The notes under the pieces were generated by a model. The model was not told the DNA's origin and ran no database searches. It was given only the letters and a program-made list of their open reading frames with translations. This document shows, piece by piece, positions 17,856 through 40,776 of a stretch of DNA of 64,000 bases. Each line of letters begins with the position of its first letter. Position 1 is the first letter of the stretch. This DNA is from Macrostomum hystrix. Its lineage: Eukaryota > Animalia > Platyhelminthes. Position numbers and translations under genes: made by a program. The stretch spans positions 372,001-436,000 of the forward strand of contig CATNEN010000007.1 of assembly GCA_950097015.1 (NCBI GenBank), read 5' to 3'.

Positions 17856-20800
17856 ATGGTACAGGAAGAGTCGCAGAAAATGGGTTCAGTCTTAGTGACT
17901 GAGCCGCAGCTGCCAACGCTGACCATTGTGGAGCAGCCGGCACAGTTCCACCGATTTCGATACGAGTCCGAGGTGGAGAAGGAAGGCAGGGTAGGCGGTC
18001 TGCTGCTCGGAAGGAGCTCCAACAATGGAAGCAAAAGCTACACGAAGGTGCGAATCAGCGGCATCGACCCCGCACAGCACTCTCAGCTGCAGCTCATTGT
18101 GTGTACAGTGAGCGCAGAGGACAAGGCGCCGCACCCGTACTACCTTCACGGAGACAACTGCAGTGACGGCTTCTTTCTGCTCAAGAAATCCGTTAACTCC
18201 ACATTCAAGGGAGACAACTTGGATATCAGGTAACTGTTGAGATATTTAAAATGGCAATCACAGTTCCGTTTTCTCTCCAGCCACAAACCTAAAAGCTTCG
18301 GTGAATGTTTTCAAGCTTCAACAGGCTGGCCGTCATCTGCGTGCCAAAGAAGAGCAAAGATGACATCCGCCGAGGCATGGAGATCAGGCTCAAGAGTGTG
18401 CCGCCTTTGCCAGACTGTAAGTAAGCCCCGATGATTTAGAAAACCTACTTTTAAGCCATACCATTTTTTCTTTATGTAAGCAGCTGAACTTTACTGGACA
18501 GATATCGAGAAGTCGACAGTGAAGTATGACAGCCGGAATATTGACAAAATTCGCCTGGCCTTCTCCTTGTCATTCATTGACACTCTGGATCAGAACTGGT
18601 ATCTTCAAACTGTGTTCAGCGAAGAGATCGTAGCCCAAAGTAAGTCGATCTGGCAGTACCGATTGAATGGTCTTAGAGATTAGCACTAGTATTTGTTATT
18701 AAATAATCTAGGGTTCCTAATAGTAACTTAATTGTAGTTGAGGATGCTGTCATGCCGTAGTCTAATAGCACTCACGTATCGCTTTGCCGGTCAATCTAAT
18801 ATGTACATGCATCACTAACTCTCGCTCACTATGTACATGCCCCCCACGCGCACGTTGATCGTATCGGTTGCACGTTGAGGCAAATATATAAATACTGTCT
18901 CGCCCTACTTGGAGGGCTCACCTTTTTCTTCGCACCTCACACAGCTTGACTCTTGAGCTATTACATTGGCGTCGCAAGGCCGAACCATGGCCTTCCTACA
19001 ACTGCCTCCACCAGCCCACTTTAGCATCAGAGACGACCCTCACTCTGTAAGCAAGCGCTGGCAGGAGTGGTCGACCAACCTTCTGCGGTACCTGGCGGCA
19101 ACCGGCATCAAAGATGAGACGCAGAAACGCCAGATCCTTCTGTATACGGCAGGCAAAGAAGTGAGCGACCTGTAGAACGAGATCCCCACCCAGTCGCAGC
19201 AACAAGAAGGCGAGCCCGCAGCCGAGCCCACGGTCGACCAGCTGATCGCACAGTTCAGCACGCACTTCCAAGGCCGCGATAACGTCGTCTTCATTCGATA
19301 CCAGTTTCGCCACTGTCTCCAGGAAGAAGGCGAATCCATAGACGCTTGGCACAGCAGACTGTGGAGCGCCTCGGAAGCCTGCAAGTTCGAGGGTCTCCGC
19401 CAGTCGCTCATCAGGGACCAAATCGTGGCCAGCTGTCGCAGCGAGTCACTGAGGAAGCGCCTGCTGAATATCCCCAACATCAGCCTGTCGGACACTCTCC
19501 AGCTGGCCAGGACGCACGAGGCAGCAGAGAAGCAGGCGGCCATCATGACCAGGACAGCGGCAGCCTCTGAGGAAGTGGCGCAACTGCGCCGCCAGGGCCA
19601 CCCGCTGCCGGAACCTTCGCGTGAGTCGCAGCAATTTGCTAAGTGCATCCGGTGCGGCGAGCTGGGCCACAAGAGCTGCAGCAGGGCGCAAGGCAAGCGA
19701 TGCAGCAGCTGCGGCAAGGCCAACCATCTGGCCAAGGCCTGCCTCAGCAGCCGCTCGAAGATTAACTCACTGCAGCCCGAGCAGGACCAATCAGCCGACC
19801 AACAACCCAACGAGGTGTTCTGCACGCTCAGCGGCAAGGACGACAGCGCCAAGTTCGTCATCAGAATCAACGGCAGTCCGGTCCGCACACTGATCGACAG
19901 CGGAGCGAGCTGCAACGTGTTGGACATGGCGACGTTCCACAGAATCTGCCGGCCCGGCACGCCGCTTTCGCCGTCCAGCACCACAGTCTTTGCGCTTGGT
20001 GCCAGCGAGCCACTGAAGACAGCCGGCCAAACAACGCTCACTGTCAGAGCGAACCACCGCGAATTGCAGGCTAATTTCATCGTCATCAGCAGCAACTGCA
20101 CACCGATTCTCGGAAGATCGTCCAGCACAAAGCTCGGCATGCTGAGAGTCGGACCTGAAGTCAGCACGAACTCTGCGGTGGTGGCCAGCCTAGCTAAGCC
20201 GGCCAGCAGTGAGGACCAGCACCTGCCCAAGCAGCTGCAACTTCAGACAATCCTGGCGGAATTCAGCGACTGCTTTCAAGGCATCGGATGCGTGAAGGGA
20301 GTCAGCGTCACTATCAGGCTCAGGCCGGATGCCACTCCAGTCTGCCAGCCGCCATCCCGAGTGCCCGTTCACCTAAGGAATGCTGTAATCAAGGAGCTGG
20401 AAGATCAACTGGCACTGGGAATCGTCGAACGAGTGCGTGGTCCAACAGCCTGGTGCTCCAGGATGGTCGCAGTTCCAAAGGCCGAGCAGGGCGAGGTTCG
20501 CATCACCCAGGACCTCCGCGAGGTGAACAAGTACGTCATCCCAGAGAAGCAGCCTATACCCACATTCGAAGAGGTGACGGACGAGATGGCGGGCGCGACG
20601 TATTTCTCGGAGCTGGACGTCGCCAAAGCCTTCCACCAAATTGAAGTCGCCGAGGAGTCTAGAGACGTGCTAACATTCTCCTCACCCATCGGGCTCCTGC
20701 GGCTGCGCCGGCTCTGCATGGGCTTCACATCCGCCTCCGAGATCCTCCAGCGGGTGATGACCTCCGTCCTGAGTGGCCTCCCCGGCGTCCGCTGGGTGCA

Positions 20801-23800
20801 CGACGACATCCTGGTGTACGCGAAAAACATTGAAGAGCACAACCAGCGCCTGCGAGACTGCCTGGCCCGGTTGAAGGCCAGCAACATCACCTTGAACCCC
20901 AAGAAGTGCCGCTTCGCTCGACCAGAGGTCGACTTTCTCGCCATGCGGCTCTCTGCATGCGGCATTCACCCAAGCGCCGAGAAAGTAGCGGCCATCAACA
21001 ACTTCAAGCGGCCGACCAACGCAACCGAGGTGCGCTCCTTCCTCGGCCTCGTCACCTTCGTGGCGCGCTTCATCAGCAACCTGTCTGACAGGGCCCGGCC
21101 ACTCCGCGAGCTGACAAGGCAGGCCGCCGAGTGGACGTGGGGCGAAAAGCAAGAGGCCGCATTCAACGACATCAAACAGACGATCGCCAGCAGCCACGCG
21201 CTGGCATTCTTCAATAGTGAGCTGCAGACTCAGCTGATCGTGGACGCCAGCCCCACGGGTGTCGGCGCCATCCTTGCCCAAGTCCAGCCAGACGGATCGA
21301 CGCGGCCGGTGGCATACGCGAGCCGCAGCCTCAGCCCGACCGAGCAGCGCTACTCCCAGACGGAGCGAGAGGCCCTCGCGGTGAAGTACGGCGGCCTGAA
21401 GTTCTACCACTACCTCAGCGGGGGTGGCAGTTTCAAGGTCATCACCGACCACAAGCCGCTGATATCCCTGTTCAGCACGGGGTCTCGGCCGCCACCCCGC
21501 ATTGACCGCATGGCGCTGCGACTGCAAGACCTTGTCTTTCGGGTCGTGTACCAGCCCGGCGCCGGCAACCCGTCTGACGTCCTGAGCCGCCAGCCGCTGC
21601 CAATGCCACCAAACAACGTCAGCCTGGGCACAATCAAGGCGGCCTCCGAACGAGACGGCACGGTACAAGCAGCGCTACACGCCATCCGCGGCCACCAATG
21701 GGACAAGAGTGACACGTGCCTGCAGGGACTCCATGGCGTATCCCACGAACTATCCGAGCTGAACAGCCTGCTGCTGCGCGGCAGTCAGCTGTACATGCCG
21801 ACGACTCTGTGATACCGGTGCATGCAGCTGGCCCACCAGGGACACCAGGGCGTCAAAAAAACGCTCGACCGCTTGCAAGCGAAGGTCTGGTGGCCAGGCA
21901 TGCGAGCATCCGTGGAGGCGCACGTAGCAGCCTGCACCAGCTGCCTGACCTGCACCAGCGAGACCTCGCCGAAAGCCACGCCGCTAAAGCCGACCGAACT
22001 GCCGGAGGGCCCCTGGCTCGAGCTGGGGCTCGACTTTCTCGGACCGATAAACGGCAAGTCGCTGCTCGTCTGTACGGACCACTTCTCCAGGTTCCCGCTC
22101 GTGGAGGTCATGGCCAGCACCACCGCCTCCGCCGTCATCAACGTGCTACGCCGGTGGTTTAGCATCTTCGGGCAGCCGACAAAGGTGACCACAGACAATG
22201 GCCCACCCTTCGCATCGGCCGAGTTCAGCAGCTTCCTGATGGATCAGGGCGCACGGCACCATCGGATCACACCTCTCTACCCTCAGGCCAACGGCGCAAC
22301 GGAGCGGTGCAATCAAGGGCTGAACAAGGCTATCCGCGCAGCGATCGTCGAAGGCAGGGACTGGACACTGGCCCTGGACGAGTACCTGGCAGCGTACAGA
22401 CGCACTCCGCACTGCTCCACGGGCGTCGCGCCGGCCAGTCTGTTATTTGGCAGGCAGATCAACGATGTGATCCCGAGTCTCCGACACTCGCAGCCCGTCG
22501 ACGCGACTCGAGCGGCCATTGCCGACAGCGACAGACAGGCCAAGGAGGCTATGAAGCGGCACGCCGACCGACGCTTCAGAGCCGCCGACCACGGCATTCG
22601 CGCCGGCGACCGCGTCCTCAGGCGCCAGCAGTCCCGGCAAAAGACCGACGCCTTCTACGAGTCGGCGCCGTGGACCGTGGCCGAGGTGCAAGGCGACTCC
22701 CTGCTCATGCAGCGCGACGACGTCGTCTGCCGCAGGCACGCCACGCAGGTCAAGCGGCTGCCCGGGCAGCCTGAGCAGTCCGATCAGCAGCCGCTCGAAC
22801 CTCCCGACGCCCCTGAGCTCGCGGAGCCAGTCGCAGCCCGGCTCCACCCCCGGCGGGCGAAGGACCCAGAGAGGAACTACAGAGAACCCGACCTGCGCAG
22901 AAGCTGAATTGCTTGATTGACAGACTAAAGTTACAAGGACTGTTCTAAAAACTTATATTGTTGCCTGCTACTACTTCTTTCATTTTATTCCCTATGATTT
23001 TTCATCCACTTGAGGAGGACTGTCATGCCGTAGTCTAATAGCACTCACGTATCGCTTTGCCGGTCAATCTAATATGTACATGCATCACTAACTCTCGCTC
23101 ACTATGTACATGCCCCCCACGCGCACGTTGATCGTATCGGTTGCACGTTGAGGCAAATATATAAATACTGTCTCGCCCTACTTGGAGGGCTCACCTTTTT
23201 CTTCGCACCTCACACAGCTTGACTCTTGAGCTATTACAGATGCATTAGGAAAAGAGGAACTATTGAGGACTAGCGATCTTTGATTGTGCGTCTTTGAGAC
23301 TGGTTCCTTTGTCTGAGCGTGAAATCTGGATTCTGAAATACTAATCAAATCAATCCGAGCCCCAAGTCGATCGAGTTGTATAACCCGTGAGCCCCAATGA
23401 TGGCATTTTCTTGCAGAGGAAAAGAAGTCGATCGATGTCGATAGCCTCAATCCGGCTGAGGTTCCAATAAGCGGTGGCGGCCTTGTTGCCATTCTAACCA
23501 AGACGCCCACGACAGGTACGTCACAACAGGCTTTACTTGAATTATGTTTATGACCAACCAGGCGAGGCTATATGTTTCCTCTTGACTTAAACAAATATAT
23601 TTTAGGAATTTCTAAAGGCAGCGTCCGCATTCATCTCAGTCCGTTGCACGAGGGGTCGAATGTCAAAATGCCTAATTTCTACGACTTGGAGGACATGAAG
23701 AAGGTAATTAGCATTCCTAGGTAATCTCTACGAGCGTGAGTGATATCCATACATGTAGCTCCATGGAAAGTAATAAACTAAACCGTCGAAAATTTTGCAG

Positions 23801-24902
23801 CACCTGCTAGTTTTCCGAACTCCAAAGCTGACACCCTACACAAAGAACGATCGGCTAAAGTGCAGACTGACCGTTCAAAGCAATGGGTTCGTCAGCGAGG
23901 AGCTAGATATAGTCTTCAGTAAAAATGCCTCGAACGTTGGAGCCGGTAAGTCTGCTGCATTCTTTGGACTTGCAGCCAAGTTATTAGAACTTATAGTTAT
24001 TGCTTTTGGTTCTTGGCTCAGTGGTTCTTGGCTCAGTGGTTCTTGCTCTTGGTTCGTGGCTCAGTGGTTCTTGCTCTTGGTTCGTGGCTCAGTGGTTCTT
24101 GCTCTTGGTTCGTGGCTCAGTGGTTCTTGCTCTTGGTTCGTGGCTCAGTGGTTCTTGCTCTTGGTTCGTGGCTCAGTGGTTCTTGCTCTTGGTTCGTGGC
24201 TCAGTGGTTCTAGCTCTTGGTTCGTGGCTCAGTGGTTCTTGCTCTTGGTTCGTGGCTCAGTGGTTCTTGCTCTTGGTTCGTGACTCAGAGGTCTTGCTCT
24301 TTGTTCGTGACTCAGTGGTTCTAGCTCTTTGTTCGTGACTCAGTGGTTCTAGCTCTTTGTTCGTGACTCAGTTGTTCTTGCTCTTTGTTCGTGACTCAGT
24401 TGTTCTTGCTCTTGGTTCGTGACTCAGTTGTTCTTGCTCTTTGTTCGTGACTCAGTTGTTCTTGCTCTTGGTTCGTGACTCAGTTGTTCTTGCTCTTTGT
24501 TCGTGACTCAGTTGTTCTTGCTCTTGGTTCGTGACTCAGTTGTTCTTGCTCTTTGTTCGTGACTCAGTTGTTCTTGCTCTTTGTTCGTGACTCAGAGGTC
24601 TTGCTCTTCGTTCGTGGCTCAGTGGTTTTTGCTCTTCGTTCGTGGCTCAGTGGTTCTTGTTCTTGGCTAGTTGCTAACTGGTTCGTGTTCTTTGGTTCGT
24701 GGCTCAGTGGCTCAGAGGTTTTGTCTTGATGATGTTATTTATTTTGTTATCACTGCTTTGAAATGGAGATCAATTTTGAGGATTTATTCTTATTTGCTGC
24801 TCAGTGGACATATTTTTGGCTGATTTCAATGACATTCAAAAGCTCTTAGCATAAATCTGCATTACAGCAAGTTGGAATGCGCGCAAGAGACCTATCAAAT
24901 AG
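17856..24902 (+). CDS. Rel/NF-kB-like RHD-only gene 1; exons 17856-18229, 18316-18416, 18484-18639, 23417-23515, 23606-23703, 23801-23945, 24868-24902, about 335 aa
   Basis: LTIVEQPAQFHRFRYESE (Rel recognition loop), PHPYYLHGDNCSDGFF (compare RelA PHPHELVGKDCRDGFY), FNRLAVICVPKK, IDKIRLAFSL..TVFSEEI, IPT LNPAEVPISGGGLVAIL, LLVFRTP, then ARKRPIK-stop. All junctions are GT-AG and the total length is a multiple of 3. The true first exon may be upstream (ATG|GTAAGT at 17057). Confidence 0.85.
18748..23238 (+). mobile_element. Ty3/Gypsy (Mag-like) LTR retrotransposon, full length, in intron of RHD gene 1
   Basis: 218-bp LTRs at 18748-18965 and 23021-23238 (TG..CA, identical by eye); 5-bp TSD GATGC; PBS-like TGGCGTCGC at 18967; PPT gaggaggac at 23012-23020. 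Confidence 0.97.
18987..22907 (+). pseudogene. Gypsy gag-pol single frame with two premature stops (TAG 19173, TGA 21810)
   Basis: Two CCHC knuckles, protease LIDSGAS, RT (DLREVN..FSELDV..MGF..VHDD), RNase H (VDASP..ERE..TDHKPL), integrase (HQGHQG, LDFLG, DNGPPF, NGATER). ORFs 18966, 19425 and 21822 are all in the same frame. Confidence 0.93.
24005..24720. repeat. 28-bp minisatellite, about 25 copies, in last intron of RHD gene 1
   Basis: Unit gttcttgctcttggttcgtggctcagtg, drifting to ...ttgttcgtgactcagtt along the array. Confidence 0.95.
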
Positions 24903-28564: not shown

Positions 28565-28790
28565 GGAATTCACTATCTCTGGAATTCCCTCTCTGGAATT
28601 CCCCCCTTTGGAATTTGGAATTCCGTCTCTTTGGAATTTCCCCTCTGGAATTCCCTCTCTGGAATTCCCCCACTTTGGAATTTCCTCTCTGGAATTCCCT
28701 CTCTGGAATTTATTCTGTCTGGAATTTACTCTCTCTGGAATTCACTCTGTCTAAAATCCCATCTTTCTAAAATTCCCTCTATCTGAAATA
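28565..28790. repeat. Imperfect tandem array of GGAATT(T)CCC motifs, 13 units (kB-site-like)
   Basis: GGAATT cores at 28565, 28581, 28595, 28610, 28617, 28633, 28647, 28661, 28677, 28691, 28705, 28721 and 28737. Confidence 0.85.
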
Positions 28791-29291
28791 TTGTGTACAA
28801 TCAGGCCTAAAGTCTAAGCCTTTAAGAAAGTCTAAGTGGCAAAGAAGATTTCAAAAAAGCTTTTAAGAAAATGGTATCTGTCTCTGCGCCTTCCCATACT
28901 TTTATATAGCACTACCTAGCGAAAAAAATGAGTGCAGCGTTAACAGTATTGGCTCAGATGTGGTCAGAGCTTTGATATAGCGTTCGAGTAAAGTGCTCAA
29001 ATATTTTTACATATTTAGAATGTGATATCTCAGATGGCCCGATAATATTAGTGTAACAACTTGTCAGTTTCCGATCGCAAACATACTGCTTAAAAAGTCT
29101 CACGGTGTCGTAAGCAACACTACGAACACAAACAAAAAAACTAACTCCCGATCCGGACTCCTCAAATTATTTCTTTCGCCACCGGAAACCCCTGAGAATA
29201 ATCAGCTACTTATTGTTCACTGTTAAACTAAACTTACAAAATAGTAGTAGGTAACTAACCTCATCAAAATTGTATTCATTCTTCAATTAAG

Positions 29292-32236
29292 ACCCAGCAC
29301 CAGCCGCCAACGCTGTCCATCAAGGAGCAGTCGGATCAATTCTACCAATTTCCGTACGAGTCAGCGGTGGAGAAGCACATCGATCTTGTCACCTACGAGC
29401 TGCCTGCTGAGTCTCAACAGCTCAGTCAAGTTTTGCATGATCCGCCGACGCTGACCATTGTGGAGCAGCCGGCACAGTTCCACCGATTTCGATACGAGTC
29501 CGAGGTGGAGAAGAAAGGCAGGGTAGGCGGTCTGCTGCTCGGAAGGAGCTCCAACAATGGAAGCAAAAGCTACACGAAGGTGCGAATCAGCGGCATCGAC
29601 CCAGCACAGCATTCTCAGCTGCAGCTCATTGTGTGTACAGTGAGCGCAGAGGACAAGGCGCCGCACCCGTACTACCTTCACGGAGACAACTGCAGTGACG
29701 GATTCTTTCTGCTCAAGAAGTCTGTGGACAGGGAAACTTGCAGGACCATTTGGGATGTCGAGTAAGGGCCAACTTGAACTTGTACATAATCGATAATTCT
29801 AGAAAAGTATTCCATTTTTTACCTATTTCACACGCAGATTTGTCAGATTGGCGGTCATCTGCGTACCGAAAAAGAAAAAGGAGGACATCAACAAGGGCGT
29901 GGAGGCCAGGCGCAGAAATGTTCCAGCGCTTCATGACTGTAAGATTGTGATTCTCTTATCCTATTTAAGTGGGTCGACAGTTTTAATCCTTCCTAAGTTT
30001 CCGAGTTTATTTCGAAAGTTTTAAAGAAAACAACAAATTAATGCGCTTAAACTTAAACGCCCTGTTCAACTAGTTGCCTATAAAAAATTAACTAGGACAA
30101 TGTTAGTCTGCTATCTGAAGAAAAAAGAAACTGCACTGGATTAGAACAATAGAACTGTTCAATATCGGGGCCGTATGCATCTACAACGTAACAGTAATAT
30201 TATTTGTTTCTTGGTACAACAGAACCTTTCTGTCAGAACTTGGTAGACTGCCTCAATTGTATGATATACAGAAAAGAAGCTTCCAGTTCTGGTTATCCCT
30301 ATCTCATCGTCCAGACTCCAATTTATCTAAGCTTATAGGGACCCGGAGTACAGCGAAGTAGACATTGCAACACAAATGTACTGCAAAACTGTTCTCTCAG
30401 TTCAAAGACAAAGTCTGTTAAAATTCACAGAGAAAACTTTCTATGTGATTTCCTAGGACACTGGAGACAGAGGGCAAAATTTCTGCAAAGCTCAGCCATT
30501 TCTACTGCAGTTTCAAGAGAGATTTCTGCCGTGAAAAATATCTATCAAATGTTTCAAACCCGGAACACAGGTGCATATTGTCAAATTTTCGTTTAGGAAA
30601 TCACAGATAAGCGAAACGATGCGTTCTGTTCGCCCGAAAATCCCTTATCCAAACAGAATTTTCCTGAAGTGCAAAGTCGGGGTCGAAAATGAAGTGCATT
30701 TTCTTTTCCGGTGCAACTGGGATCCTAATAAGGCGGTCAGGGAAAATTTCGTTGCACAGACATTTCATCCAAAGCTAAGAAATTTCGTGGTCTCACAGAA
30801 GAAGACAAAAGCATTTTTAATGGTGCAAGAAAATACAGATGTGACAGGAAAGCTAGCAAAGTACAGAGAAAACTTAGCACAGTTTGCAGCTGCCCTAAAA
30901 AGTGTAAAAAGTGTTCTTTTAATATGGTTAGCAACATCACAATATGGTAAAAGTATGCGTGCCAAGCTCGTTTTTCGCATTTTATTTCTACCGTGTAAGC
31001 ATTACCAATATGATTCCTTTCGATGCATCCGATTTGAAGTTAATTTTTAACCTTACTATATTGTTACTATTGTTACATTTGAATAATAATAGCGAATAAC
31101 TATTCACAAAATAAAAAAATTTGCACTTTTAAAGCATGCGCAAAGTAATAATAACAACAAAATTATCGCATAAATTTGCTAAAATGATTTCTTTCGAAAA
31201 AAGAATAAAATAAATGAAAAACAACTACTGTAGATCCTACTTTCAAAGTATTCAGTGTGCTACACTGAATACATGCATTGCTGGTATGGATTAGCAGTCA
31301 ATAAAAATCCTAATAGAACCACCCGTGTTCTCTCAGGCCCAGCTGAGCCGACAATGGAATACACCAGCAGCAATCTTGGTCGCATTCGTCTGGCCTTCTC
31401 ACTCTCATTCACGGACACCAATGGTGCCTCCTGGTGTCTTAAAACAATTTTCAGCGACGAAATTTCCAGCGACAGTAAGACCATGACTGTGTTTACTATT
31501 GTACTTGTAAATTAGAAATTATAGTTTTTTATCAGAGCTCATTGTTCCATTAAGTTGCAACGCTCACTTATCTGTCATCAGAAGCAAACAAGACCATTGA
31601 AGTTCAGGACATGAACCCTTACGAACTGCCGATGGAGGGCGGCTGCCTTGTTGCCATCCTCACCAGAACTCCAACCACAGGTGCCTTCTGCTCATTGTTT
31701 CAATGCTTAGTGCAAAGTGGCTCAAATACCAAGAAGACTGCCTTGATGTTTCAGGTCATTCAAAGAAGGACGTGAAGGTACATTTCACTGCGACCAACAC
31801 TCATACGAACGAGAAGTTTGAACTCAGGATGGACTTGTTTGATATGAAAAAGGTAAAGCATTTTACTCGATATACTTGCATTTGAAACTCAGATGAAGGG
31901 ACTGTGGATTGACTTGGCTCGAATGTAATGTTTCGATGTCGATTGCAGCACCTTATGTTGGTCAAGGCACCAGACATGAGACGCATGACTGACAATGAGA
32001 AACTGAAGTGCACAGTGACAGTCCACAGCCAAGGATTCGTCAGTGAGGAACTTCATGTGGTCTTTGTAAGACCTGGCAATTCAAATGTTAATACAGGTAA
32101 GTGGCTTGTTGAGGAACAACATGCGAGCATACCAATTGCGGTTTCCATGTTTTTTTGGAATCTTAAAGACTCAATCAACTTTCGCAACCGTCATTCAGCT
32201 GCAGGAAAAGGGAATCCGCTGAAGCGAAAACGATAA
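29292..32236 (+). CDS. Rel/NF-kB-like RHD-only gene 2; exons 29292-29761, 29838-29938, 31337-31474, 31582-31680, 31755-31852, 31949-32096, 32205-32236; first exon upstream (candidate 27385-27432)
   Basis: Same exon layout and phases as gene 1. EQPAQFHRFRYESE, FVRLAVICVPKK, NLGRIRLAFSL, MNPYELPMEGGCLVAIL, HLMLVKAP, ends GNPLKRKR-stop. Length is a multiple of 3. Confidence 0.85.
30350..30950 (+). mobile_element. Probable 3' remnant of a non-LTR retrotransposon in an intron of RHD gene 2
   Basis: ORF 30571-31050 contains RIFLKCKVGVENEVHFLFRC, resembling the C-terminal C..C..E.E.HF...C knuckle of LINE ORF2; no RT core visible. Confidence 0.45.
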
Positions 32237-33452
32237 CCGCGGAAAGAAGTTCGTCAAGTCCTACCATCGGCTCGGCCTTCCCGGAACATCTTGCACAATA
32301 TTGCGCAAGAAGTCCGTTATTACAACCTTTTGTTGCTCATTGTGTTTTAAATCTGTTTGCATGACTAAAAGAGAGCATTATGATACTTATTCCAGAAGTC
32401 AATTCAAGGCTTGTTTGGCCTATTTTGGAATAAGGTCGTATTATTGAAGCCAGTGCGTTCAATCTCTCAGTGAGAAATCACTGGCTAGAAAATCAGAAGG
32501 ACATCCATCTCTCTCGGTGTTATTATACTGTACACAAGTTTGTAGACAGTGAAAAACAGTTAGACAGTGAAACAAGCTGTTGGAAAGTCAAAAGGACTGT
32601 TACTCAGTGAGGTTAGACAGTGAAACAAACCATTGCGGGTTTTTCGTAACATAAAATTAAATAAACCAGAATTGCTGCGAAATACGACTGTACTTGCCAA
32701 TTTTTTTTTCCTTTTTTCTAGCCCGTGATGTAAAGTTCTTGCTTACATTTTTGCGATATCAATTTTCTCAGCAAATATTTTCCTTCAAATAGTTACCGTC
32801 TTCTAAATTTGATAGCGTTTTGCATTGCGCACACGTTTGAATTTTACTGGAACCGCATTTTTTAACAAAATAAGCTAATTGTCTTTTTGACGACCTGAGT
32901 TGTTTATTAAGGAAACCGAGATTAAATAAAGGTCCAACCGATTCAATTTTAGATTTTAGATAGAAAGTGGTGATAAACAATCCCACTTGCAGAAAATACA
33001 AGTGAAGAATATGTACATTAACGCTAATACGACCGTATTAATAGCCTCGACGTAATTTGCCGATTTTACTCATTCCGTCCGCTGTACACTCAAGACACTG
33101 TACTCAACTGGACAGACAAGACTGTTCACTCTGTCCCGTTTTAGTACTGTTTGATACAAAGTACGTCAGTAGAAGGAGAGTAAATGTTTAGTGCCTTGTT
33201 TTAGTGTCGGTTCGTGGATACAAACTGCGTCCTTAGTTTAGGTACATGTTGGAAAGCATTCAAACACATTCACAGCAAGAGTTAAGTTTTCTGCATAATG
33301 GTAAGTTGCAAATATTCACAGTTCCATTAAAAATGCTTCTGATCGTGACAAAAACTGGTACTGAAATTCTTGATAAATGCCTTTTGCTGCAACTGGGGGT
33401 GTTAAGTCAAGCATCTGATCGATAAAACAGACCCAGTTTTAAATAGCGATTT

Positions 33453-34000
33453 AACAGTAGAACTAGCAAGAGGGGATTTCTCCCCTGAAAACTTTTTGTA
33501 ATGCACCCGAAAGGAGCAACTCAAGGACACGAAACTCAAGAACACGCGCCAAATTTTTGTTGCGCATTTTCAGAAACAAGAATCAAGTCGCCAGCCCTTC
33601 AGACCGTCGAGATATTTAACGGTTCTGACCGAAGGTCTGTTTTTTCCGTAAGAGCTTGTGTATTTCATACACAACTGTACAGAAATTTGCACTGCGCCTC
33701 AGTGCGGCCTTGCCAGGCCTTCAAACTTTATCAGCTTGTCACCCGAATGTGCCTGCATCAATTCCGAGTTTAGGCCAATATCAAGGCTTGATCAGTGAAA
33801 CAAGAAAACTTCGCATTAGGAATTCCTCCATTGCCAGCTGGACAACCCTGCTGACGGTGCTGACGAAGTCGGGGTGGTGACTGATTAGTTGACAGACTAG
33901 GCGAGGGTCCTGTGGTTGAGCTTTGTCTTGAGGCCTGATCAGCGAAATGGAAGAAACTCACATCAGGTTGTCCATATTCGGCTGGTGCCACTTGTTGAAG
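33453..34000. mobile_element. Foldback/MITE-like element, partial (left arm + centre)
   Basis: Starts aacagtagaacta..ggggatttctcccc; collinear with 41114-41720. Confidence 0.75.
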
Positions 34001-35000
34001 GTGGGGGAAAATATCACCTTTGATATAAAAACGGGTGGCAAATTGGCTTGGTGTAGTCCTACTGTTGCGTGAGCATGAGCATGAGCTGGGGCAGCATGTA
34101 ACGAGTACAAGAATACTGAATAATTTAGTGCTATCCTTGGAGTCTCGTCTTGTCGATGTGGACACATCAATTGTGGGACTTGGTGTCCTCGAGTCGACTG
34201 CTCAGTTGAATACGGCACTGGATGCTACCACTGGAATGGACAGTTAGTTAGTCTTCTTTGGCAGGTGCAAAGCGGCCAGCTGATGGAGCAGGGGAGGCTT
34301 ACTTGTACCGCGATCCACGAGGCACTTGGCGGTGGCTGAAGCTTGAGACAAGACAGAGCCTGAAGACAGGGCTGCGTGGTCTCCTTGTCTCCTTTTGCAG
34401 CTGCAGTCGCTTTTGATGCTGTAAGGCTCGTCCTACGATTTCTTGCTTATGCTTCTCGTGATGTCGCCGTAATGAAAACCCTCCTTCGCCACGCCGTCCG
34501 ACAAGATCAAGGCGTCTGTTGGGCCTTTCATAATTCAGGGAGTCCAGCTGCTTCAGGACCCAGATGTACCGGAAATGGCTGGGGATCCAGTGGCTGTTGC
34601 TTGTGGCATGGAGGCATTTTGCTTGTTCACTTTTATAGTTAATTGCTTTGCACACTTGTACAATGTAGATTATCGACCATGGTAATGCGTACCTTATGCG
34701 ACATGGTAATCCAATTCAGACTGGACGATTGCGCGTTGAACTGTCCAGTCCCACAACGAATGTAATGCGATACAAATGCGAATTTTCGATCATCAACGCC
34801 ATATTCTTTGCAAACAATAATAGTTCCAGGGGTAGGCGTTCATGACCTTGACCTATCATGCGACGAAAAATTAATTCTTTTTTCTGTAGACATCCTAAAT
34901 CAATGTCGTAACGTCGGTACTGCCACAGTGTGCAATTGACATCATTTGACATTTATATATGAAGTAATACAAAAGCAAAAAAAATACAAATATATTCTAG

Positions 35001-36930
35001 CCTGCTGACAACGCCGTACAGCCGCCAACGCTGTCCATCAAGGAGCAGTCGGATCAATTCTACCAATTTCCGTACGAGTCAGCGGTGGGGAAGCATATTG
35101 ATCTTGTCACCTACGAGCCGCCTGCTGAGTCTCAACAGCTCAGTCAAGTTTTGCATGATCCGCCGACGCTGACCATTGTGGAGCAGCCGGCACAGTTCCA
35201 CCGATTTCGATACGAGTCCGAGGTGGAGAAGGAAGGCAGGGTAGGCGGTCTGCTGTTCGGAAGGAGCTCCAACAATGGCAGCAAAAGCTACACGAAGGTG
35301 AGAATCAGCGGCATCAACCCCGCACAGCACTCTCAGCTGCAGCTCATTGTGTGTACAGTGAGCGCAGAGGACAAGGCGCCGCACCCGTACAGCCTTCACG
35401 GAGACAACTGCAGTGACGGCTTCTTTCTGCTCAAGAAGTCTGTGGACAGGGAAACTTGCAGGACCATTTGGGATGTCGAGTAAGGGCCAACTTGAACTTG
35501 CACATAATCGATAATTCTAGAAAAGTATTCCATTTTTTACCTATTTCACACGCAGATTTGTCAGATTGACCGTCATCTGCGTACCGAAAAAGAAAAAGCA
35601 GGACATCAACAAGGGCGTGGAGGCCAGGCGCAGAAATGTTCCAGCGCTTCATGACTGTAAGATTTGTGATTTAATTTGCCCAGTTATATAAGTTTTTAAC
35701 TTTCAAGTTTTTTAGCTTTTTAATTACTCGTAATTTAAAAAAGGTAGCAAAGGTAGCTAAATTAAAGCGTTGCAAACCTAAAGGTTGTTCTTTTACTTCA
35801 ATACTTTAAAAACATAGTGACCTAGTTTTAGACGGATATCTTGACGTCCTACGCATTTTCTTTTTTTCATGTAGAAAATATTGTTTTTTTGCCTATTACC
35901 TATCATATGAATATATCTGGATGTATTAATACAATGTTTTTCTATTTTATAGCAGAGAATCCGGATGATAACAGATAATGTAAGTATTAGCAGTCAATAA
36001 AATCCTAATAGAGCCACCCGTGTTCTCTCAGGCCCAGCTGAGCCGACAATGGAATACACCAGCAGCAATCTTGGTCGCATTCGTCTGGCCTTCTCACTCT
36101 CATTCACGGACACCAATGGTGCCACCTGGTGTCTTAAAACAATGTTCAGCGACGAAATTTCCAGCGACAGTAAGACCATGACTGTGTTTACTATTGTACT
36201 TGTAAATTAGAAATTATAGTTTTTTATCAGAGCTCATTGTTCCATTAAGTTGCAACGCTCACTTATCTGTCATCAGAAGCAAACAAGACCATTGAAGTTC
36301 AGGACATTAACCCTCAAGATCTGCCGATGGAGGGCGGCTGCCTTGTTGCCATCCTCACCAGAACTCCAACCACAGGTGCCTTCTGCTCATTGTTTCAATG
36401 CTTAGTGCAAAGTGGCTCAAATACCAAGAAGACTGCCTTGTTGTTTCAGGTCATTCAAAGAAGGACGTGAAGGTACATTTCACTGCGACCAACACTCATA
36501 CGAACGAGAAGTTTGAACTCAGTATGGACTTGTTTGATATGAAAAAGGTAAAGCATTTTACTCGATATACTTGCATTTGAAACTCAGATGAAGGGACTGT
36601 GGATTGACTTGGCTCGAATGTAACGTTTCGATGTCGATTGCAGCACCTTATGTTGGTGAATGCACCAGACATGAGACGCATGACTAACAATGAGCAACTG
36701 AAGTGCACAGTGAGAGTCCACAGCCAAGGATTCAACAGTGCGGAACTTCATGTGGTCTTTGTAAGACCTGGCAATTCAAATGTTAATACAGGTAAGCGGC
36801 TTGTTGAGGAACAACATGCGAGCATACCAATTGCGGTTTCCATGGTTTTTTGGAATCTTAAAGACTCAATCAACTTTCGCAACCGTCATTCACCTCAGGA
36901 AAAGGGAGTCCGCTGAAGCGAAAACGATAA
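35001..36930 (+). CDS. Rel/NF-kB-like RHD-only gene 3; exons 35001-35479, 35556-35656, 36032-36169, 36277-36375, 36450-36547, 36644-36791, 36899-36930; candidate start micro-exon ATG|GTAAGT at 33298
   Basis: Close paralog of gene 2, including most introns; ends GSPLKRKR-stop; frame intact. Confidence 0.85.
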
Positions 36931-38084
36931 CCGCGGTAGGAAATTATTTAATTCTGACATGCATAAGGTCAGCTGTTTGGACAGCGCTACCCCACTGGAT
37001 TTTAATGTTTCGATATCCCTATTGACTATCGCAACCAACATCGAATTGCAGAGCACAGAAATCTGCTAAAGAGAAAGGTCGACACACGAGCTATAACTGA
37101 TAAATGCTTTGACTGTAACTTACGAGTACATCTTAACAAAGACTAAGGACCAAGATAGAGTCAAAGTAATCTGATATTGAATAAAATTGTACTATTGCAG
37201 TTAGTTTTTACCGATAAGTTTATTACTCAAAATCGTAGAAAAAATGCTCTTGGAACCAGTAGAAGGACTGCACTGAAGAACTCGACAATGTACTCGACGC
37301 TGTCTACTCATACAGCATCCAAGATTCTTACACGATCCATTTTTAATCGTATTTGAAAATTGCTACACAAAAGCCCTTTATCTTTCTTTTTGTTATTGGC
37401 GCACCCAAAGAAAAAAATAAATAAACAACAAGTTTTTTCAGTAGAACTCTTTCAGAGTTAATGTTACAACAAGCTATATATATTTACATCGCTTAGTAAT
37501 TTACTGGCTTGGTCTCTTTGTGACAGATACAGAGTAGCACAACAAAGCAATGCTACTTTCGCTTAAGTAGCTTGAGCGAATATGAAAATATTACTTATCT
37601 TCTTTGGCGGTTAGCAAACTGTGATGTTGTGTGTGCAATCACTTTTCTAGAGATTCGTCACGTACAAGATGGAACAACAATGGAACGACCTATTTGTGTT
37701 TTAAATTTTATTTTAGCAGTGACGTGCATTTGAGAAGTTCCATCTACTGTACATATTGAGCAGACCTTATGAGCAATATAGAGACGGGTACTCATATTCC
37801 AACCTGATAACCAGTGCCTTTCTAGTTTTCATTTTAGAAAATACAATAATTTAGTAGACAAGCAAGGACTGCAGCCTGAATAGGTTCAAAAATTGGAAAA
37901 AATGGTAAGCTTAGCATTCACTAAGAGGACATTGTTGAATTTGTAATAAAAATTCTAACTATGGAATTAAGTACCATTATTCTTCCAGATGATCCCGACT
38001 CACAATACTTATATTAGTTCTAGCGCCCCTTCCTTGAAATAAGGGGGTAACTTTTTGTTACAATGGGTTTGTGCCAGATTGGGA

Positions 38085-38385
38085 CTGTGTCATATCGGGA
38101 TTGTGTCATATCGGGATTGTGTCAAAACGTGATTGCATCATAACGAGATTGTGTCATAACGGTATTGTGTCATGACGGGATTGTGTCATGACGGGATTGT
38201 GTCATGACGGGATTGTGTCATAACGGGATTGTGTCATGACGGGATTGTGTCAAAACGGTATTGTGTCATGATGGTATTGTGTCATGACGCGATTGTGTCA
38301 TAACGGGATTGTGTCAAAACGGTATTGTGTCATGATGGTATTGTGTCATGACGCGATTGTGTCATAACGGGATTGTGTTATATCG
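38085..38385. repeat. 16-bp minisatellite, about 18 copies
   Basis: Unit gggattgtgtcatgac, upstream of the first large exon of RHD gene 4. Confidence 0.92.
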
Positions 38386-38592
38386 ACATTGCCTAAAATT
38401 TCACTTCGTGGCAATGGCATTCAGGCAATGGCCAGCCATTGTATAGAATTAATTGCCCCGTAGCAATAGGGTTGATGTAAAATTTAACCAATGATTTTAT
38501 CTAATGAGTCGTAGGAAGTTACAGTATGAGGCAATTTCCTTTGACACCAGCGGCGATAGCCGCTGATTTCCTGTGAACCCTCCATTGTGCAG

Positions 38593-40776
38593 ACAGTGAT
38601 TGTAAACGGAGCTAAGAACAAAGCAATTTGCAATACTCAAAAAAGCTACCGAGTCACAATAGCTGACAATTTCCAGCTTGAACAGGCGGAGCGGGGCCCA
38701 GCCCTGTCAATTCTAGCGCAGCCGGCCAGGTTCTACCGGTGCCTGCCCGAATCCCGAGTCAGGAACGGCAGATTTAAACGGCTGGTCGGCAGAAATCAGG
38801 AGGACTCTACTAACATGTACATGAAGGTGCGCATCGGTGACTTTGACCCAGGCAGTCATCGGCAGCTGCAGCTGACTGTGTGCACTGTCAACGCCGAGGA
38901 CAAGGCTCCGCATCCGTTCCAGCTGTATGGAGACAACTGCGAGAATGGCTACTTTGCACTGGAGAAGTCTGTGGCAAAGCTGGCTGGCAAAGAGTTTTGG
39001 GATATTTGGTGAGCAGAAGCATGTGTTGTTAGCTATACGAGCTACTCTTTCACTTGTGTTTTGCCCTTGTCCGGTCCAGTCTCACTTCCTCCTGTACCCT
39101 CCTGTACTGCTCGCTAAGCCAGAGTTCTCTGATTGGCTGAGGCCCCTCGATCGCCCTCGCCATGCTGCGGCTCTGCTTAGTCATGCCCTACCCTTTTGCC
39201 CTAACCCCAGCCCCAATCCGACGGCCGACACAAACCGGTTTTGCGGGTCGGCGCCTGATTGGTCGGCCTCACCCCACGTTTCTCTTTCTGCCCCGTCAAG
39301 GCGTCACCAGGTATCCCCGTCTCGCACTTTAAAACTCGGCCCTTAACTGAGTATCAACTACAAACGGGCCAAGCGAAGAGAGCTAGTAAATAGGAAATTG
39401 AAACCAGCAGCAAAAATTCTCTCGAGCCGTCGCGCGTATATTTAACGCCTCCAACGAATGAGTAGTGCAACATTTGACCCCTCCCCGGTAAGACTGGCAA
39501 CTACAAATTTATCATTTCCTACACCTCAATCCGTTTTACCTGTTATTGTTACTTTATATTCAGTAGGATCTAATGGGCTGTCCGCTTATCCCTTGTTATT
39601 ATTCCCAGTCGAGTGGCCATCCGCATATTGGGCCACGTTTCAAACTATATTTTCGAGACAAGGAATGTCCGTACGCTTCTTGTCCATTAGTTACCCCCCC
39701 GACGCCGAAGTGTCTGAACGCCTCGAGGGTTTTCGGCCCTCTTTCCTCCTTCTCTCTTCCACAATGAACCCCCGGGCTGTCCAAAACTCGAATCCCATGC
39801 AAGAAAACTTCAACACATACAACAGTACAAAACCTGCTGTCGACTGGCGATAAAAAAATTGAAAATGAGCCGTTGAACTTTCTTTTATTCAGCTTTGACA
39901 ACCTGGCCATCATTAGCGTGCCTAAAACTGCGGATGGAATCGAAGATGGCATGAATACCAGACGCCGCAATGTACCCAAACTGTTTGACTGTGAGTTGGT
40001 CCCATAATTACCCGGAGTTTAGCCTTGCTTCTAAATAAGAACAATTTTGCACTAACTAAATTTGCGTACAGGTCCTATCGAGCCGTTGGCCCAGTACCAG
40101 AGCGACAATTTGGGCCGGATTCGTCTTGCTTTCTCGCTCTCCATCATGAATCCAAATGGGGAGGTCAGTTTCCAGAGGACCCGGTTCAGCGAAGAGATTA
40201 TCAACGAAGGTAGGATCTCAGAAGATATGAGCATAGTTTTAATTGACCTCAAGGTGAAACTCACGCATCTCAATTCGCAGATGACAGAAAGGACATCGAA
40301 ATCCAGAAGCTGAATCCTGCCAAGCTTCCAATGAATGGTCGCTGCACTGTTGCCATCTACACAATGAGAACCACTGCAGGTGCCCCTTTTTGACCATCCA
40401 TTTGCTGTGCATCTAAAATAAACAATGCTTATTGCTGAAGTTTACAAGTTTATACTGCCACGCTTTTCAGGCATCGACAAGACTCAAGTGAAAGTCACAT
40501 TGACTGCAACAGGAGCAAATGCAGGCAATTCACCTCTAGAGTGCAGAGTTTTAACCATGAAAAAAGTATCGCTTTTTGCTGAATTTTCAAGCATGCTTTG
40601 CATTGATTAATGTATTTGGTTGTGCATTTTGGTCGATTCTTTTTCAGCGTCTCTTGGTGGTGGAAACACCGGACATGGCAGGCGAGACCAGTTCTTCCGT
40701 ACTGCGCTGCTTGATCGCCGTCAGCAGCCACGGCTTTGCGGGTACTCAGCATGAGCTGCAGTTTGTGAGAAACTAG
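38593..40776 (+). CDS. Divergent Rel/NF-kB-like gene 4 lacking DNA-contact residues and NLS; exons 38593-39008, 39893-39990, 40072-40209, 40281-40379, 40471-40565, 40648-40776; candidate start micro-exon ATG|GTAAGC at 37902
   Basis: LSILAQPARFYRCLPESR, PHPFQLYGDNCENGYF, FDNLAIISVPK, NLGRIRLAFSL, LNPAKLPMNG, LLVVETP, ends LQFVRN-stop. Phases are consistent and the length is a multiple of 3. Confidence 0.8.

What the first reader, a model, noticed from the sequence alone, without database searches (positions are those of the whole stretch)
17856..40776. Tandem cluster of four tail-less Rel/NF-kB-like genes (RHD + NLS + stop)
Seen: four same-strand genes with the same exon layout and intron phases, each reading through a full Rel homology domain. 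Genes 1-3 stop within 0-3 residues of a basic NLS (ARKRPIK*, LKRKR*, LKRKR*). Known: Rel proteins carry a C-terminal transactivation domain and NF-kB p105/p100/Relish carry ankyrin repeats; RHD-only forms (p50/p52) normally arise by proteolysis and act as repressors or partners. Motifs (RFRY, PHP..L.G..C.DGF, L..I.V.KK, VFRTP, KRKR) point to Rel/NF-kB rather than NFAT. Inference: this is a lineage-specific expansion of genetically encoded p50-like factors. If the host is a flatworm it is more notable, because canonical NF-kB is generally reported as missing in planarians and parasitic flatworms (needs checking).
Basis: partly seen in the sequence, partly recalled or inferred. Interest (0 to 1): 0.92.

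Follow-up and report, generated by a model that had tools for sequence, protein, structure and literature searches.

The report
Tandem short Rel-like genes, flatworm
Four neighbouring genes in a Macrostomum flatworm encode very divergent Rel/NF-kB-type DNA-binding proteins that end right after their nuclear-import signal. The same cluster exists, unstudied, in Macrostomum lignano, so this is a real lineage-specific variant of a known family rather than a new kind of system.

Summary
Four same-strand genes (17856-24902, 29259-32236, 35001-36930, 38560-40776) share one exon layout, GT-AG introns and the same intron phases. Exon 1 of genes 1-3 passes Pfam's RHD_DNA_bind cut-off. Genes 1-3 stop 0-3 residues after a basic motif that sits on a terminal mini-exon; gene 4 has neither the RFRY loop nor that motif.

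So the host is a flatworm and the proteins are natively 'RHD + NLS only'. This is not wholly new: the M. lignano copies are public, a 2026 paper reports seven divergent RHD genes in a planarian, and this scan flagged another Rel-like gene on another piece of this genome.

Open points:
- Genes 2-4 have no ATG in exon 1 (spliced leader or a missing 5' exon).
- No transcript data were available for this genome.
- The p50-like role is inferred.

A kB-like motif is strongly enriched around the clusters in both species.

The parts
17856..24902 (+). Gene 1: complete 7-exon ORF (326 aa) with ATG at 17856 and TAG at 24900-24902. It encodes the RHD N-domain, an IPT-like domain and the tail ...NVGAASWNARKRPIK*. 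Exons: 17856-18229, 18325-18416, 18502-18639, 23417-23515, 23606-23703, 23801-23945, 24868-24902.
   Evidence: Gene model. Pfam RHD_DNA_bind 47.2 bits on exon 1. 58% identity over 326 aligned positions to M. lignano P0002.
18738..23238 (+). LTR retrotransposon (protease, RT, RNase H, integrase-like ORFs at 19425-22907) inserted in intron 3 of gene 1. The LTRs lie at 18738-18965 and 23010-23238 and are 99.1% identical.
   Evidence: LTR comparison. Pfam RVT_1, RT_RNaseH and Asp_protease hits. ORFs.
24007..24710 (.). 28-bp minisatellite, 25 copies, in intron 6 of gene 1.
   Evidence: Tandem Repeats Finder.
29259..32236 (+). Gene 2: 7 exons with the ORF open from 29259 and no in-frame ATG in exon 1. 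It ends ...GKGNPLKRKR* (TAA at 32234-32236). Exon 1 carries a degenerate copy of the PPTL..RFRY segment upstream of the real one.
   Evidence: Pfam RHD_DNA_bind 48.3 bits.
35001..36930 (+). Gene 3: 7 exons. The ORF opens directly after a TAG that could also serve as an AG acceptor at 34999-35000. It ends ...GKGSPLKRKR*. It is 97% identical to gene 2, but only over the gene body (35019-36945 against 29301-32251).
   Evidence: Pfam RHD_DNA_bind 49.2 bits.
38560..40776 (+). Gene 4: 6 exons, divergent (41-45% identical to the M. lignano relatives). The recognition loop reads RCLP in place of RFRY. The stop falls inside the exon 6 equivalent (...FVRN*), and there is no basic NLS-like motif.
   Evidence: Pfam RHD_DNA_bind 18.8 bits, below the cut-off. 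dN/dS about 0.3 against g1-g3.
28565..28750 (+). Array of kB-like sites (unit TCTCTGGAATTCCC, about 12 copies), 0.5-0.7 kb upstream of gene 2's exon 1.
16880..16905 (+). Single kB-like site within the extended motif CCATGGAAATCCCACGG, 0.97 kb upstream of gene 1's ATG. Related copies occur at 27240 (- strand) and upstream of M. lignano RHD genes.

Best explanation
What it is (shown): the locus is a tandem array of four paralogous genes from a Macrostomum-specific, fast-evolving subfamily of Rel-homology-domain transcription factors. Each gene directly encodes only three elements:
- the N-terminal Ig-like DNA-binding domain, with the recognition loop RFRYES..E enlarged by four residues;
- the IPT-type dimerisation domain;
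- in genes 1-3, a short basic nuclear-localisation-like motif on a conserved terminal mini-exon, followed at once by a stop. There is no ankyrin or activation tail.

Evolution (shown): the array is shared with M. lignano and evolves in concert, with gene conversion of exon 1 between g1 and g2/g3 and of the whole gene body between g2 and g3.

How it most likely works (inferred): the proteins enter the nucleus and form homo- or heterodimers that bind kB-like sites of the type GGAAWTCCC. These sites are concentrated around the clusters in both species, so autoregulation is likely. Lacking an activation domain, the proteins would act like p50/p52. They would either compete or repress, or serve as DNA-binding partners for other factors, for example the other Macrostomum RHD paralogues that carry short acidic C-terminal tails.

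Gene 4 has lost the R/Y contact residues and the basic motif but has kept an open, constrained ORF. It is most likely a non-DNA-binding dimer partner.

Genes 2-4 probably obtain their AUG either from the Macrostomum spliced leader (which ends in AUG) or from an unrecognised 5' exon.
For: RHD identity:
- Pfam RHD_DNA_bind on exon 1 and 55-63 bits on full M. lignano relatives.
- The alignment is colinear with canonical Rel/NF-kB across both domains, and the basic motif falls in the NLS column.

Lineage:
- An exhaustive HMMER search of 1.84 billion representatives found only 29 hits. The top 16 (bar one spurious repeat protein, P0014) are M. lignano, and canonical NF-kB/Rel appears only at E 1e-5 to 1e-3.
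- g1-g4 fall in one clade with P0002/P0031-35, support 98/93.
- M. lignano loci hold 3-4 same-strand copies.

Tail-less form:
- The stop lies 0-3 codons after the basic motif in g1-g3.
- The same 'cag|...KRARPS*' or 'RKRPRQQT*' mini-exon occurs in four M. lignano genes.
- No Ank or other domain was found in intergenic ORFs.

Constraint and concerted evolution:
- All ORFs are intact. dN/dS is about 0.3 at dS above 1.
- For g1 against g2, dS of exon 1 is 0.16 and dS of the other exons is 1.46.
- g2 and g3 are identical only within the gene body.

Binding sites:
- All 10 GGAAWTCCC matches in the window lie in or beside the cluster (0.76 expected).
- There are 24 matches in M. lignano locus L002 (0.55 expected).
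- The extended motif CCATGGAAWTYCCACGG lies 1-2 kb upstream of RHD genes in both species.

Spliced leader: it ends in ATG, and 20-30% of Macrostomum genes are trans-spliced (PMC8629364, PMC10468722).
Against: - No transcript data for this genome were available, so the 5' and 3' ends are inferred.
- Genes 2-4 have no in-frame ATG in exon 1, and no homologue of the M. lignano 5' exon was found.
- Pfam RHD_dimer does not hit any family member. The dimerisation domain is supported by the alignment and by a model of the relative, not of the window proteins themselves.
- The recognition loop has Cys replaced by Ser and a 4-residue insertion. The linker Arg of canonical Rel is not conserved (S/D/K in g1/g2/g4). 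DNA specificity may therefore differ from kB.
- Most kB-like matches lie inside minisatellites, so they are not independent events.
- g2 against g3 gives dN/dS about 0.9 on very few changes.
- g1 carries a young retrotransposon in an intron.
Confidence: 0.75

Rival explanations
1. Only gene 1 (or none) is functional. Genes 2-4 are 5'-truncated or decaying duplicates kept similar by gene conversion, that is, pseudogenes or non-coding copies.
For: - Exon 1 of g2-g4 has no in-frame ATG.
- tblastn found no 5' exon.
- g2/g3 similarity stops inside exon 1 and 15 bp after the stop, with unrelated flanks.
- g2 against g3 gives dN/dS about 0.9.
- g4 lost the RFRY residues and the basic motif.
Against: - All 6-7 exons of every copy keep open frames and canonical splice sites.
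- g4 differs from the others at dS above 1 but dN/dS about 0.3, which means long-term purifying selection.
- In-frame AG acceptors lie at the very start of each ORF (29291, 35000, 38559), and the Macrostomum spliced leader ends in ATG (PMC8629364, PMC10468722).
- M. lignano P0031-type genes have a separate phase-0 5' exon, so an ATG outside the main exon is normal for this subfamily.
Confidence: 0.15
2. The short form is not the main product. Transcripts skip the terminal mini-exon and continue into unrecognised downstream exons that encode an activation or inhibitory tail.
For: - The exon 6 donors are strong (CAG|GTAAGT), so they could pair with other acceptors.
- g4 has a possible donor just before its stop.
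- More distant M. lignano RHD paralogues (P0040, P0015, P0016) carry 20-50 further residues, with an acidic/hydrophobic motif, after their KRKRP.
Against: - The mini-exon plus immediate stop is conserved in g1-g3 and in four M. lignano genes, although the rest of the coding sequence of the old paralogues (g1 against g2) has diverged to dS above 1.
- M. lignano gene models for this clade end there.
- Intergenic + strand ORFs show no Ank or other domain, only TE remnants.
- The next gene starts 1.6-4.4 kb downstream.
Confidence: 0.08
3. The genes belong to NFAT/TonEBP or another IPT/TIG family and only resemble Rel superficially.
Against: - No NFAT chain reaches E<=10 by sequence, whereas 27 Rel/NF-kB chains do.
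- All non-Macrostomum HMMER hits whose names were looked up (10 of 13; P0024 and P0029 were not checked, and P0014 was later rejected as a spurious repeat) are NF-kB p105, Rel or Dorsal.
- The RFRY, PHP..L.G..C.DG and L.I.CV.KK motifs are Rel-type.
Confidence: 0.02

Closest known systems
Macrostomum lignano 'RHD domain-containing' / hypothetical proteins BOX15_Mlig011721g1 (P0002), Mlig001933g1/g2, Mlig012767g1, Mlig008833g1 (P0031-P0035); contigs NIVC01000109.1 and NIVC01000475.1
   Same: - 52-58% (g1-g3) and 41-45% (g4) identity over nearly the full length, and the same clade (98/93).
- Same-strand tandem arrays of 3-4 genes.
- The same terminal mini-exon with a basic motif plus stop.
- Only RHD_DNA_bind is recognised by Pfam.
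- kB-like motif clusters lie between the genes.
   Different: - It is a different species (60-70% identity even in exon 1).
- P0031-type genes have a recognisable 42-codon 5' exon that was not found here.
- One-to-one orthology is blurred by species-specific duplication or conversion.
Vertebrate NF-kB p50/p52 (processed products of p105/p100)
   Different: - p50/p52 arise by proteolytic processing or co-translationally from ankyrin-bearing precursors with a glycine-rich region (established knowledge). Here the stop codon is genomic, and there is no Ank or glycine-rich region.
- Identity is only 22-24%.
- The recognition loop has Cys replaced by Ser and a 4-residue insertion.
Class II Rel proteins (RelA, RelB, c-Rel, Dorsal/Gambif1)
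   Different: Rel proteins carry C-terminal transactivation domains of 200-300 residues. The genes here end 0-3 residues after the basic motif.
Seven divergent RHD transcription factors of Schmidtea mediterranea (PMC13563047, Development 2026)
   Same: They are flatworm RHD genes on long branches with no clear NF-kB orthology. Flatworms also lack Toll-like receptors (PMC8609888).
   Different: No planarian protein reached E<=0.001 with the exon 1 profile. The relationship to the Macrostomum clade is unknown. Tandem arrangement and tail-less ends were not reported in the passages I read.
Nematostella Nv-NF-kB (natively lacks the ankyrin half; recalled from memory, not checked here)
   Same: It is an RHD protein encoded without an inhibitory ankyrin domain.
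   Different: It has canonical NF-kB sequence with a glycine-rich C-terminus and is a single gene. It is not a tandem, concertedly evolving array.

Membership tests
Rel homology domain superfamily | N-terminal RHD DNA-binding domain (Pfam PF00554) above the gathering score | tested here: met
   Exon 1 alone scores 47.2, 48.3 and 49.2 bits for g1-g3 (cut-off 27). g4 scores 18.8 bits, below the cut-off. Full-length M. lignano relatives score 55-63 bits.
Rel homology domain superfamily | C-terminal RHD dimerisation domain recognised by sequence (Pfam PF16179) | tested here: not met
   RHD_dimer did not hit any of seven full-length Macrostomum family members, whereas canonical controls scored 112-130 bits. 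Single exons of the window genes gave nothing.
Rel homology domain superfamily | IPT/Ig-like dimerisation fold directly after the N-domain | tested here: met
Rel homology domain superfamily | Recognition loop R-x-R-Y-x-C-E-G | tested here: inconclusive
   g1-g3 read RFRYES-EVEK-EGR: R, R and Y are kept, Cys is replaced by Ser, and there is a 4-residue insertion before EG. g4 reads RCLPESRV, with the second Arg and the Tyr lost.
Rel homology domain superfamily | Basic NLS at the C-terminal end of the RHD | tested here: met
   RKRP (g1) and KRKR (g2, g3) fall in the NLS column of the alignment with c-Rel and p105. The motif is absent in g4. Its import function was not tested.
Class I NF-kB (p105/p100/Relish) | C-terminal ankyrin repeats (with or without a death domain) and a glycine-rich processing signal | tested here: not met
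   The stop follows directly after the basic motif. Intergenic ORFs have no Ank hit. Control p105 proteins show Ank and Death domains.
Class II Rel (RelA/c-Rel/RelB/Dorsal) | C-terminal transactivation domain | tested here: not met
   The proteins end 0-3 residues after the basic motif, as do the M. lignano relatives.
NFAT/TonEBP | NFAT-type RHR closer in sequence and fold than Rel/NF-kB | tested here: not met
Macrostomum short-RHD cluster subfamily (P0002/P0031 clade) | Clade membership, tandem same-strand arrangement, and a terminal mini-exon with a basic motif plus stop | tested here: met
   Clade support is 98/93. Tandem clusters occur in L001 and L002. The mini-exon is conserved. g4 lacks the mini-exon.

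The most novel reading that the evidence does not exclude
In a lineage that lacks Toll-like receptors and canonical p105/p50, Macrostomum flatworms have rebuilt the Rel system as a self-regulating set of natively tail-less RHD proteins. Tandem paralogues are kept alike in their DNA-binding exon by gene conversion. They bind kB-like site clusters placed next to their own genes. Activity would be tuned by mixing DNA-binding subunits (g1-g3), a binding-dead and NLS-less decoy (g4), and distant paralogues with short acidic tails, rather than by IkB or ankyrin inhibition.
Probability: 0.2. Interest if true: 0.75.

Novelty: new variant of a known kind. Interest (0 to 1): 0.55.

Why it matters
Surveys state that flatworms lack p50/p105 (PMC11432056) and Toll-like receptors (PMC8609888). 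Clear NF-kB homologues have also been hard to find in planarians (PMC13563047). This locus shows that a basal flatworm genus keeps, and has expanded, genuine two-domain Rel-type proteins.

These proteins have an unusual architecture. They are encoded without any tail, arranged in tandem, homogenised by gene conversion, and flanked by kB-like motifs in two species. Macrostomum lignano is transgenic- and RNAi-tractable, so two questions become directly testable:
- what a Rel factor does without the Toll/IkB context;
- whether tail-less subunits act as repressors, partners or decoys.

The M. lignano relatives are already in public databases, and related observations exist for planarians. The finding therefore refines current knowledge rather than overturning it.

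Tried and rejected
- Pfam on single small exons (exons 3 and 6 of several genes) gave nothing, because they are too short.
- tblastn with the N-terminal 75 residues of M. lignano P0031-P0034 against the window, at word size 2 and E up to 50, found no credible 5' exon for genes 2-4.
- blastn between the four upstream regions found no shared promoter or exon, apart from the g2/g3 conversion tract.
- P0014, a 917-aa ENA protein with ten 'stretches' in the HMMER search, is a low-complexity repeat protein and not an RHD. I dropped it.
- The profile search with alignment A2 returned mainly fish RelB/c-Rel and no further flatworm relatives.
- I looked for a basic mini-exon downstream of gene 4 and found only chance K/R runs more than 1.3 kb away.
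- AATAAA/ATTAAA signals after the stops are unremarkable, and none occurs within 1.2 kb of gene 4. This is not informative.
- The LTR element's target-site duplication could not be defined cleanly.
Whole-protein tests were therefore made on the M. lignano relative P0002 and tied to the window proteins by alignment in scripts.
- No NFAT sequence was available for the tree, so the position relative to NFAT rests on PDB sequence and fold ranking only.
Full report

The window is eukaryotic, with introns and transposable elements. Six-frame reading and junction analysis give four + strand genes with the same layout.

- g1 (17856-24902) is a complete 7-exon ORF of 326 codons, from an ATG to TAG.
- g2 (to 32236) and g3 (35001-36930) have the same seven exons.
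- g4 (38560-40776) has the first six.
- Every junction is GT-AG, and the intron phases are 2,1,1,1,0,1 in all four.
- Exon 1 alone hits Pfam RHD_DNA_bind at 47-49 bits (cut-off 27) for g1-g3 and 18.8 bits for g4.
- g1 ends ...ARKRPIK*, and g2 and g3 end ...LKRKR*. In each case the basic motif sits on a 31-35-nt terminal mini-exon.
- In g2 the last intron is also open in frame, so read-through gives the same end.
- g4 stops inside the exon 6 equivalent (...FVRN*) without a basic motif.
- tblastn with the nearest relatives finds these four genes and nothing else in the 64 kb.

- VFRTP is present only in g1.
- Only g1 has an in-frame ATG in exon 1.
- g1's intron 3 contains a young LTR retrotransposon at 18738-23238. 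Its LTRs are 99.1% identical, and it carries protease, RT and RNase H domains.

**2. Whose genes are they?**

I searched a profile of the four exon 1 peptides (A1) against 1.84 billion representative proteins with HMMER. It found only 29 proteins at E<=0.001.

[quoted passage not shown] NCBI lists them as 'hypothetical protein BOX15_Mlig...' and UniProt as 'RHD domain-containing protein'.
- Canonical NF-kB p105, c-Rel and Dorsal appear only at E 1e-5 to 1e-3.
- Identity to M. lignano is 60-70% even in exon 1 and 41-58% over the full length. The window is therefore from a Macrostomum-like species, not from the public M. lignano assembly.
- In M. lignano the relatives are arranged in the same way. 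Contig NIVC01000475.1 carries four same-strand copies, and NIVC01000109.1 carries P0002 followed by two more.
- A maximum-likelihood tree puts g1-g4 in one clade with P0002 and P0031-P0035 (98/93). The internal order is unresolved, and each species forms its own subclades. This is the pattern expected under repeated duplication or gene conversion.

**3. Is it a full Rel homology domain?**

Pfam recognises only the N-terminal half in every family member. However, the alignment with canonical proteins is colinear through both halves. It covers PHP..L.G..C.DG, L.I.CV.KK, RL.F, the GG..V.IL strand, KKHLL..TP, and the basic motif in the NLS column.

I therefore modelled the nearest relative, P0002, with a 22-sequence alignment. 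The model has mean pLDDT 83.7 and pTM 0.69.

- Foldseek ranks RelA, RelB, c-Rel, p50 and p52 first (E 2e-21 to 1e-15), then NFAT and TonEBP (about 1e-14).
- By sequence, g1 exon 1 matches 27 PDB chains, all Rel/NF-kB, with RelB and p65 best at 3e-6. No NFAT chain is found at E<=10.

The proteins are therefore two-domain Rel-type RHDs. Two features differ from the canonical loop. The conserved Cys is replaced by Ser, and four residues are inserted (RFRYES-EVEK-EGR). The linker Arg is not conserved. In g4 the loop reads RCLPESRV, so the second Arg and the Tyr are lost.

**4. Are the proteins truly tail-less?**

- The terminal mini-exon with a basic motif and an immediate stop is present in g1-g3.
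- It also occurs in four M. lignano genes ('cag|..SGTAVKRARPS*', '..NSRKRPRQQT*').
- The rest of the coding sequence of the old paralogues (g1 against g2) has diverged to dS above 1, so the conservation of this end is meaningful.
- The larger + strand ORFs between the genes contain only transposon remnants and no ankyrin or other domain.
- Downstream of g4 lie unrelated minus-strand genes.

This argues that 'RHD + NLS + stop' is the selected product. Without transcripts from this species it remains an inference. More distant M. lignano RHD paralogues (P0040, P0015, P0016, P0036) continue for 20-50 residues after KRKRP, ending in an acidic/hydrophobic motif. Tails therefore exist elsewhere in the genus.

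**5. Are all four genes alive?**

- All ORFs are intact.
- Between old paralogues dN/dS is about 0.3 at dS 1.4-2.3, and this includes g4.
- For g1 against g2/g3, exon 1 is 92% identical in DNA, while the other exons are 50-72% identical. dS is 0.16 in exon 1 and 1.46 elsewhere, which indicates gene conversion of the DNA-binding exon.
- g2 and g3 are 97% identical only from 29301 to 32251 against 35019 to 36945. That is the gene body, introns included, and the flanks are unrelated. This again points to conversion rather than a recent segmental copy.

g2-g4 lack an ATG in exon 1. In M. lignano the P0031-type genes have a separate 42-codon, phase-0 5' exon, but I found no counterpart here.

A lead from another note of this scan fits the sequence. 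The Macrostomum spliced leader ends in ...TTGCATG, and 20-30% of genes are trans-spliced (PMC8629364, PMC10468722). In-frame AG acceptors sit at the very start of the open frames: tattctAG|CCT at 35000, gcgatAG|CCG at 38559, and caattaAG|ACC at 29291. This idea is plausible but untested.

**6. How it probably works**

- Shown: the RHD fold, the basic motif in NLS position, the absence of a tail, the tandem arrangement, and concerted evolution.
- Inferred: the proteins dimerise, enter the nucleus and bind kB-like DNA.

One observation supports the inference. The motif GGAAWTCCC occurs 10 times in the window (0.76 expected), and every match lies in or beside the cluster:

- 16888 and 17242, upstream of g1;
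- 27039, 27240 and the 14-bp-unit array at 28565-28750, upstream of g2;
- 41132, just after g4.

In M. lignano locus L002 the motif occurs 24 times (0.55 expected). One is a GGGGGGAATTCCCCCC palindrome 1.3 kb upstream of one gene. The others lie in minisatellites with a different unit, 1.9-2.1 kb upstream of two further genes.

A longer element, CCATGGAAWTYCCACGG, lies 1-2 kb upstream of RHD genes in both species. Matches inside arrays are not independent. Even so, the recurrence across species with unrelated repeat units suggests binding sites and autoregulation.

Lacking an activation domain, g1-g3 would behave like p50/p52, as competitors or repressors, or as DNA-binding partners. g4 (loop residues lost, no basic motif, ORF constrained) would be a non-binding partner. 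These functional statements are hypotheses.

**7. Comparison with what is known**

The architecture equals processed p50/p52 but is genomically encoded. Sequence and fold are nearest to class II Rel proteins. The defining features of class I (ankyrin repeats) and of class II (activation domain) are both absent, so I file the genes only under the RHD superfamily and the Macrostomum short-RHD clade.

Literature:
- A 2024 survey found no p50/p105 in Platyhelminthes (PMC11432056).
- Toll-like receptors are absent from M. lignano (PMC8609888).
- A 2026 paper reports seven highly divergent RHD factors in Schmidtea and no clear NF-kB (PMC13563047).
- I found no paper on the Macrostomum RHD genes.

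**8. Verdict**

This is a lineage-specific variant of a known family. It is conserved within Macrostomum, and its M. lignano counterparts are already visible in public protein sets but undescribed. Interest is moderate. The kB-motif association, the concerted evolution and the possible decoy paralogue are the parts most worth an experiment.

Noticed in passing
window 16888, 17242, 27039, 27240, 28565-28750, 41132; L002 8684, 18235-18543, 19189, 24443-24559, 25205; L001 17445: The kB-like motif GGAAWTCCC is confined to the RHD cluster in the window (10 matches, 0.76 expected). It is also highly enriched between the M. lignano RHD genes (24 matches, 0.55 expected). An extended element CCATGGAAWTYCCACGG recurs 1-2 kb upstream of RHD genes in both species. 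The repeat units of the arrays differ between species, but the core is shared.
   Followed up: partly
window 17910-18229 vs 29442-29761 / 35160-35479; 29301-32251 vs 35019-36945: There is evidence of concerted evolution. Exon 1 of g1 is 92% identical in DNA to g2/g3 (dS 0.16), while the other exons are 50-72% identical (dS about 1.5). g2 and g3 are 97% identical over the gene body only, with unrelated flanks and a different intron 2.
   Followed up: yes
window 29259-29440 and 35001-35158: Exon 1 of g2 and g3 carries an in-frame degenerate copy of the start of the RHD (QPPTLSIKEQSDQFYQFPYESAVEK) upstream of the real PPTLTIVEQPAQFHRFRYESEVEK. M. lignano P0031-type proteins keep a fainter trace of it (PQILSLKEPQ).
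   Followed up: partly
window 18738-23238: A young Ty3/gypsy-like LTR retrotransposon sits in intron 3 of g1, in the same orientation as the gene. It has 229-bp LTRs that are 99.1% identical, long open gag-pol-like ORFs, and a tRNA-primer-like TGGCG just after the 5' LTR.
   Followed up: partly
window 34999-35001, 38558-38560, 29289-29292: The open frames of g3 and g4 begin directly after a TAG whose AG could serve as a trans-splice acceptor. g2 has in-frame AGs at 29291, 29297 and 29303. With a spliced leader ending in ATG, all would be in frame.
   Followed up: partly
window 38065-38385: A 16/32-bp minisatellite (GGGATTGTGTCATAAC, about 20 copies) lies 0.2-0.5 kb upstream of g4's exon 1. Its significance is unknown.
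   Followed up: no
window 1035-4641 (- strand): There are two copies of a Helitron/PIF1-helicase-like ORF fragment separated by repeats. These are transposon remnants at the left end of the window.
   Followed up: no
window 45235-51725 (- strand): ORFs resembling a class C (metabotropic glutamate-type) receptor lie downstream of the cluster. A large ligand-binding-domain-like ORF is at 50034-51725 and a 7TM-like ORF at 45235-45990. This was judged by eye only.
   Followed up: no
P0040, P0015, P0016, P0036, P0045 (M. lignano): A second, more distant Macrostomum RHD subfamily is also tandemly arranged (PAA90847-90851 on one contig). After KRKRP it keeps a short tail ending in an acidic/hydrophobic motif (DFMAFLSNP, DLLTSFANQ, MDEFLQIV). 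This is a candidate mini activation motif and a possible partner for the tail-less proteins.
   Followed up: no
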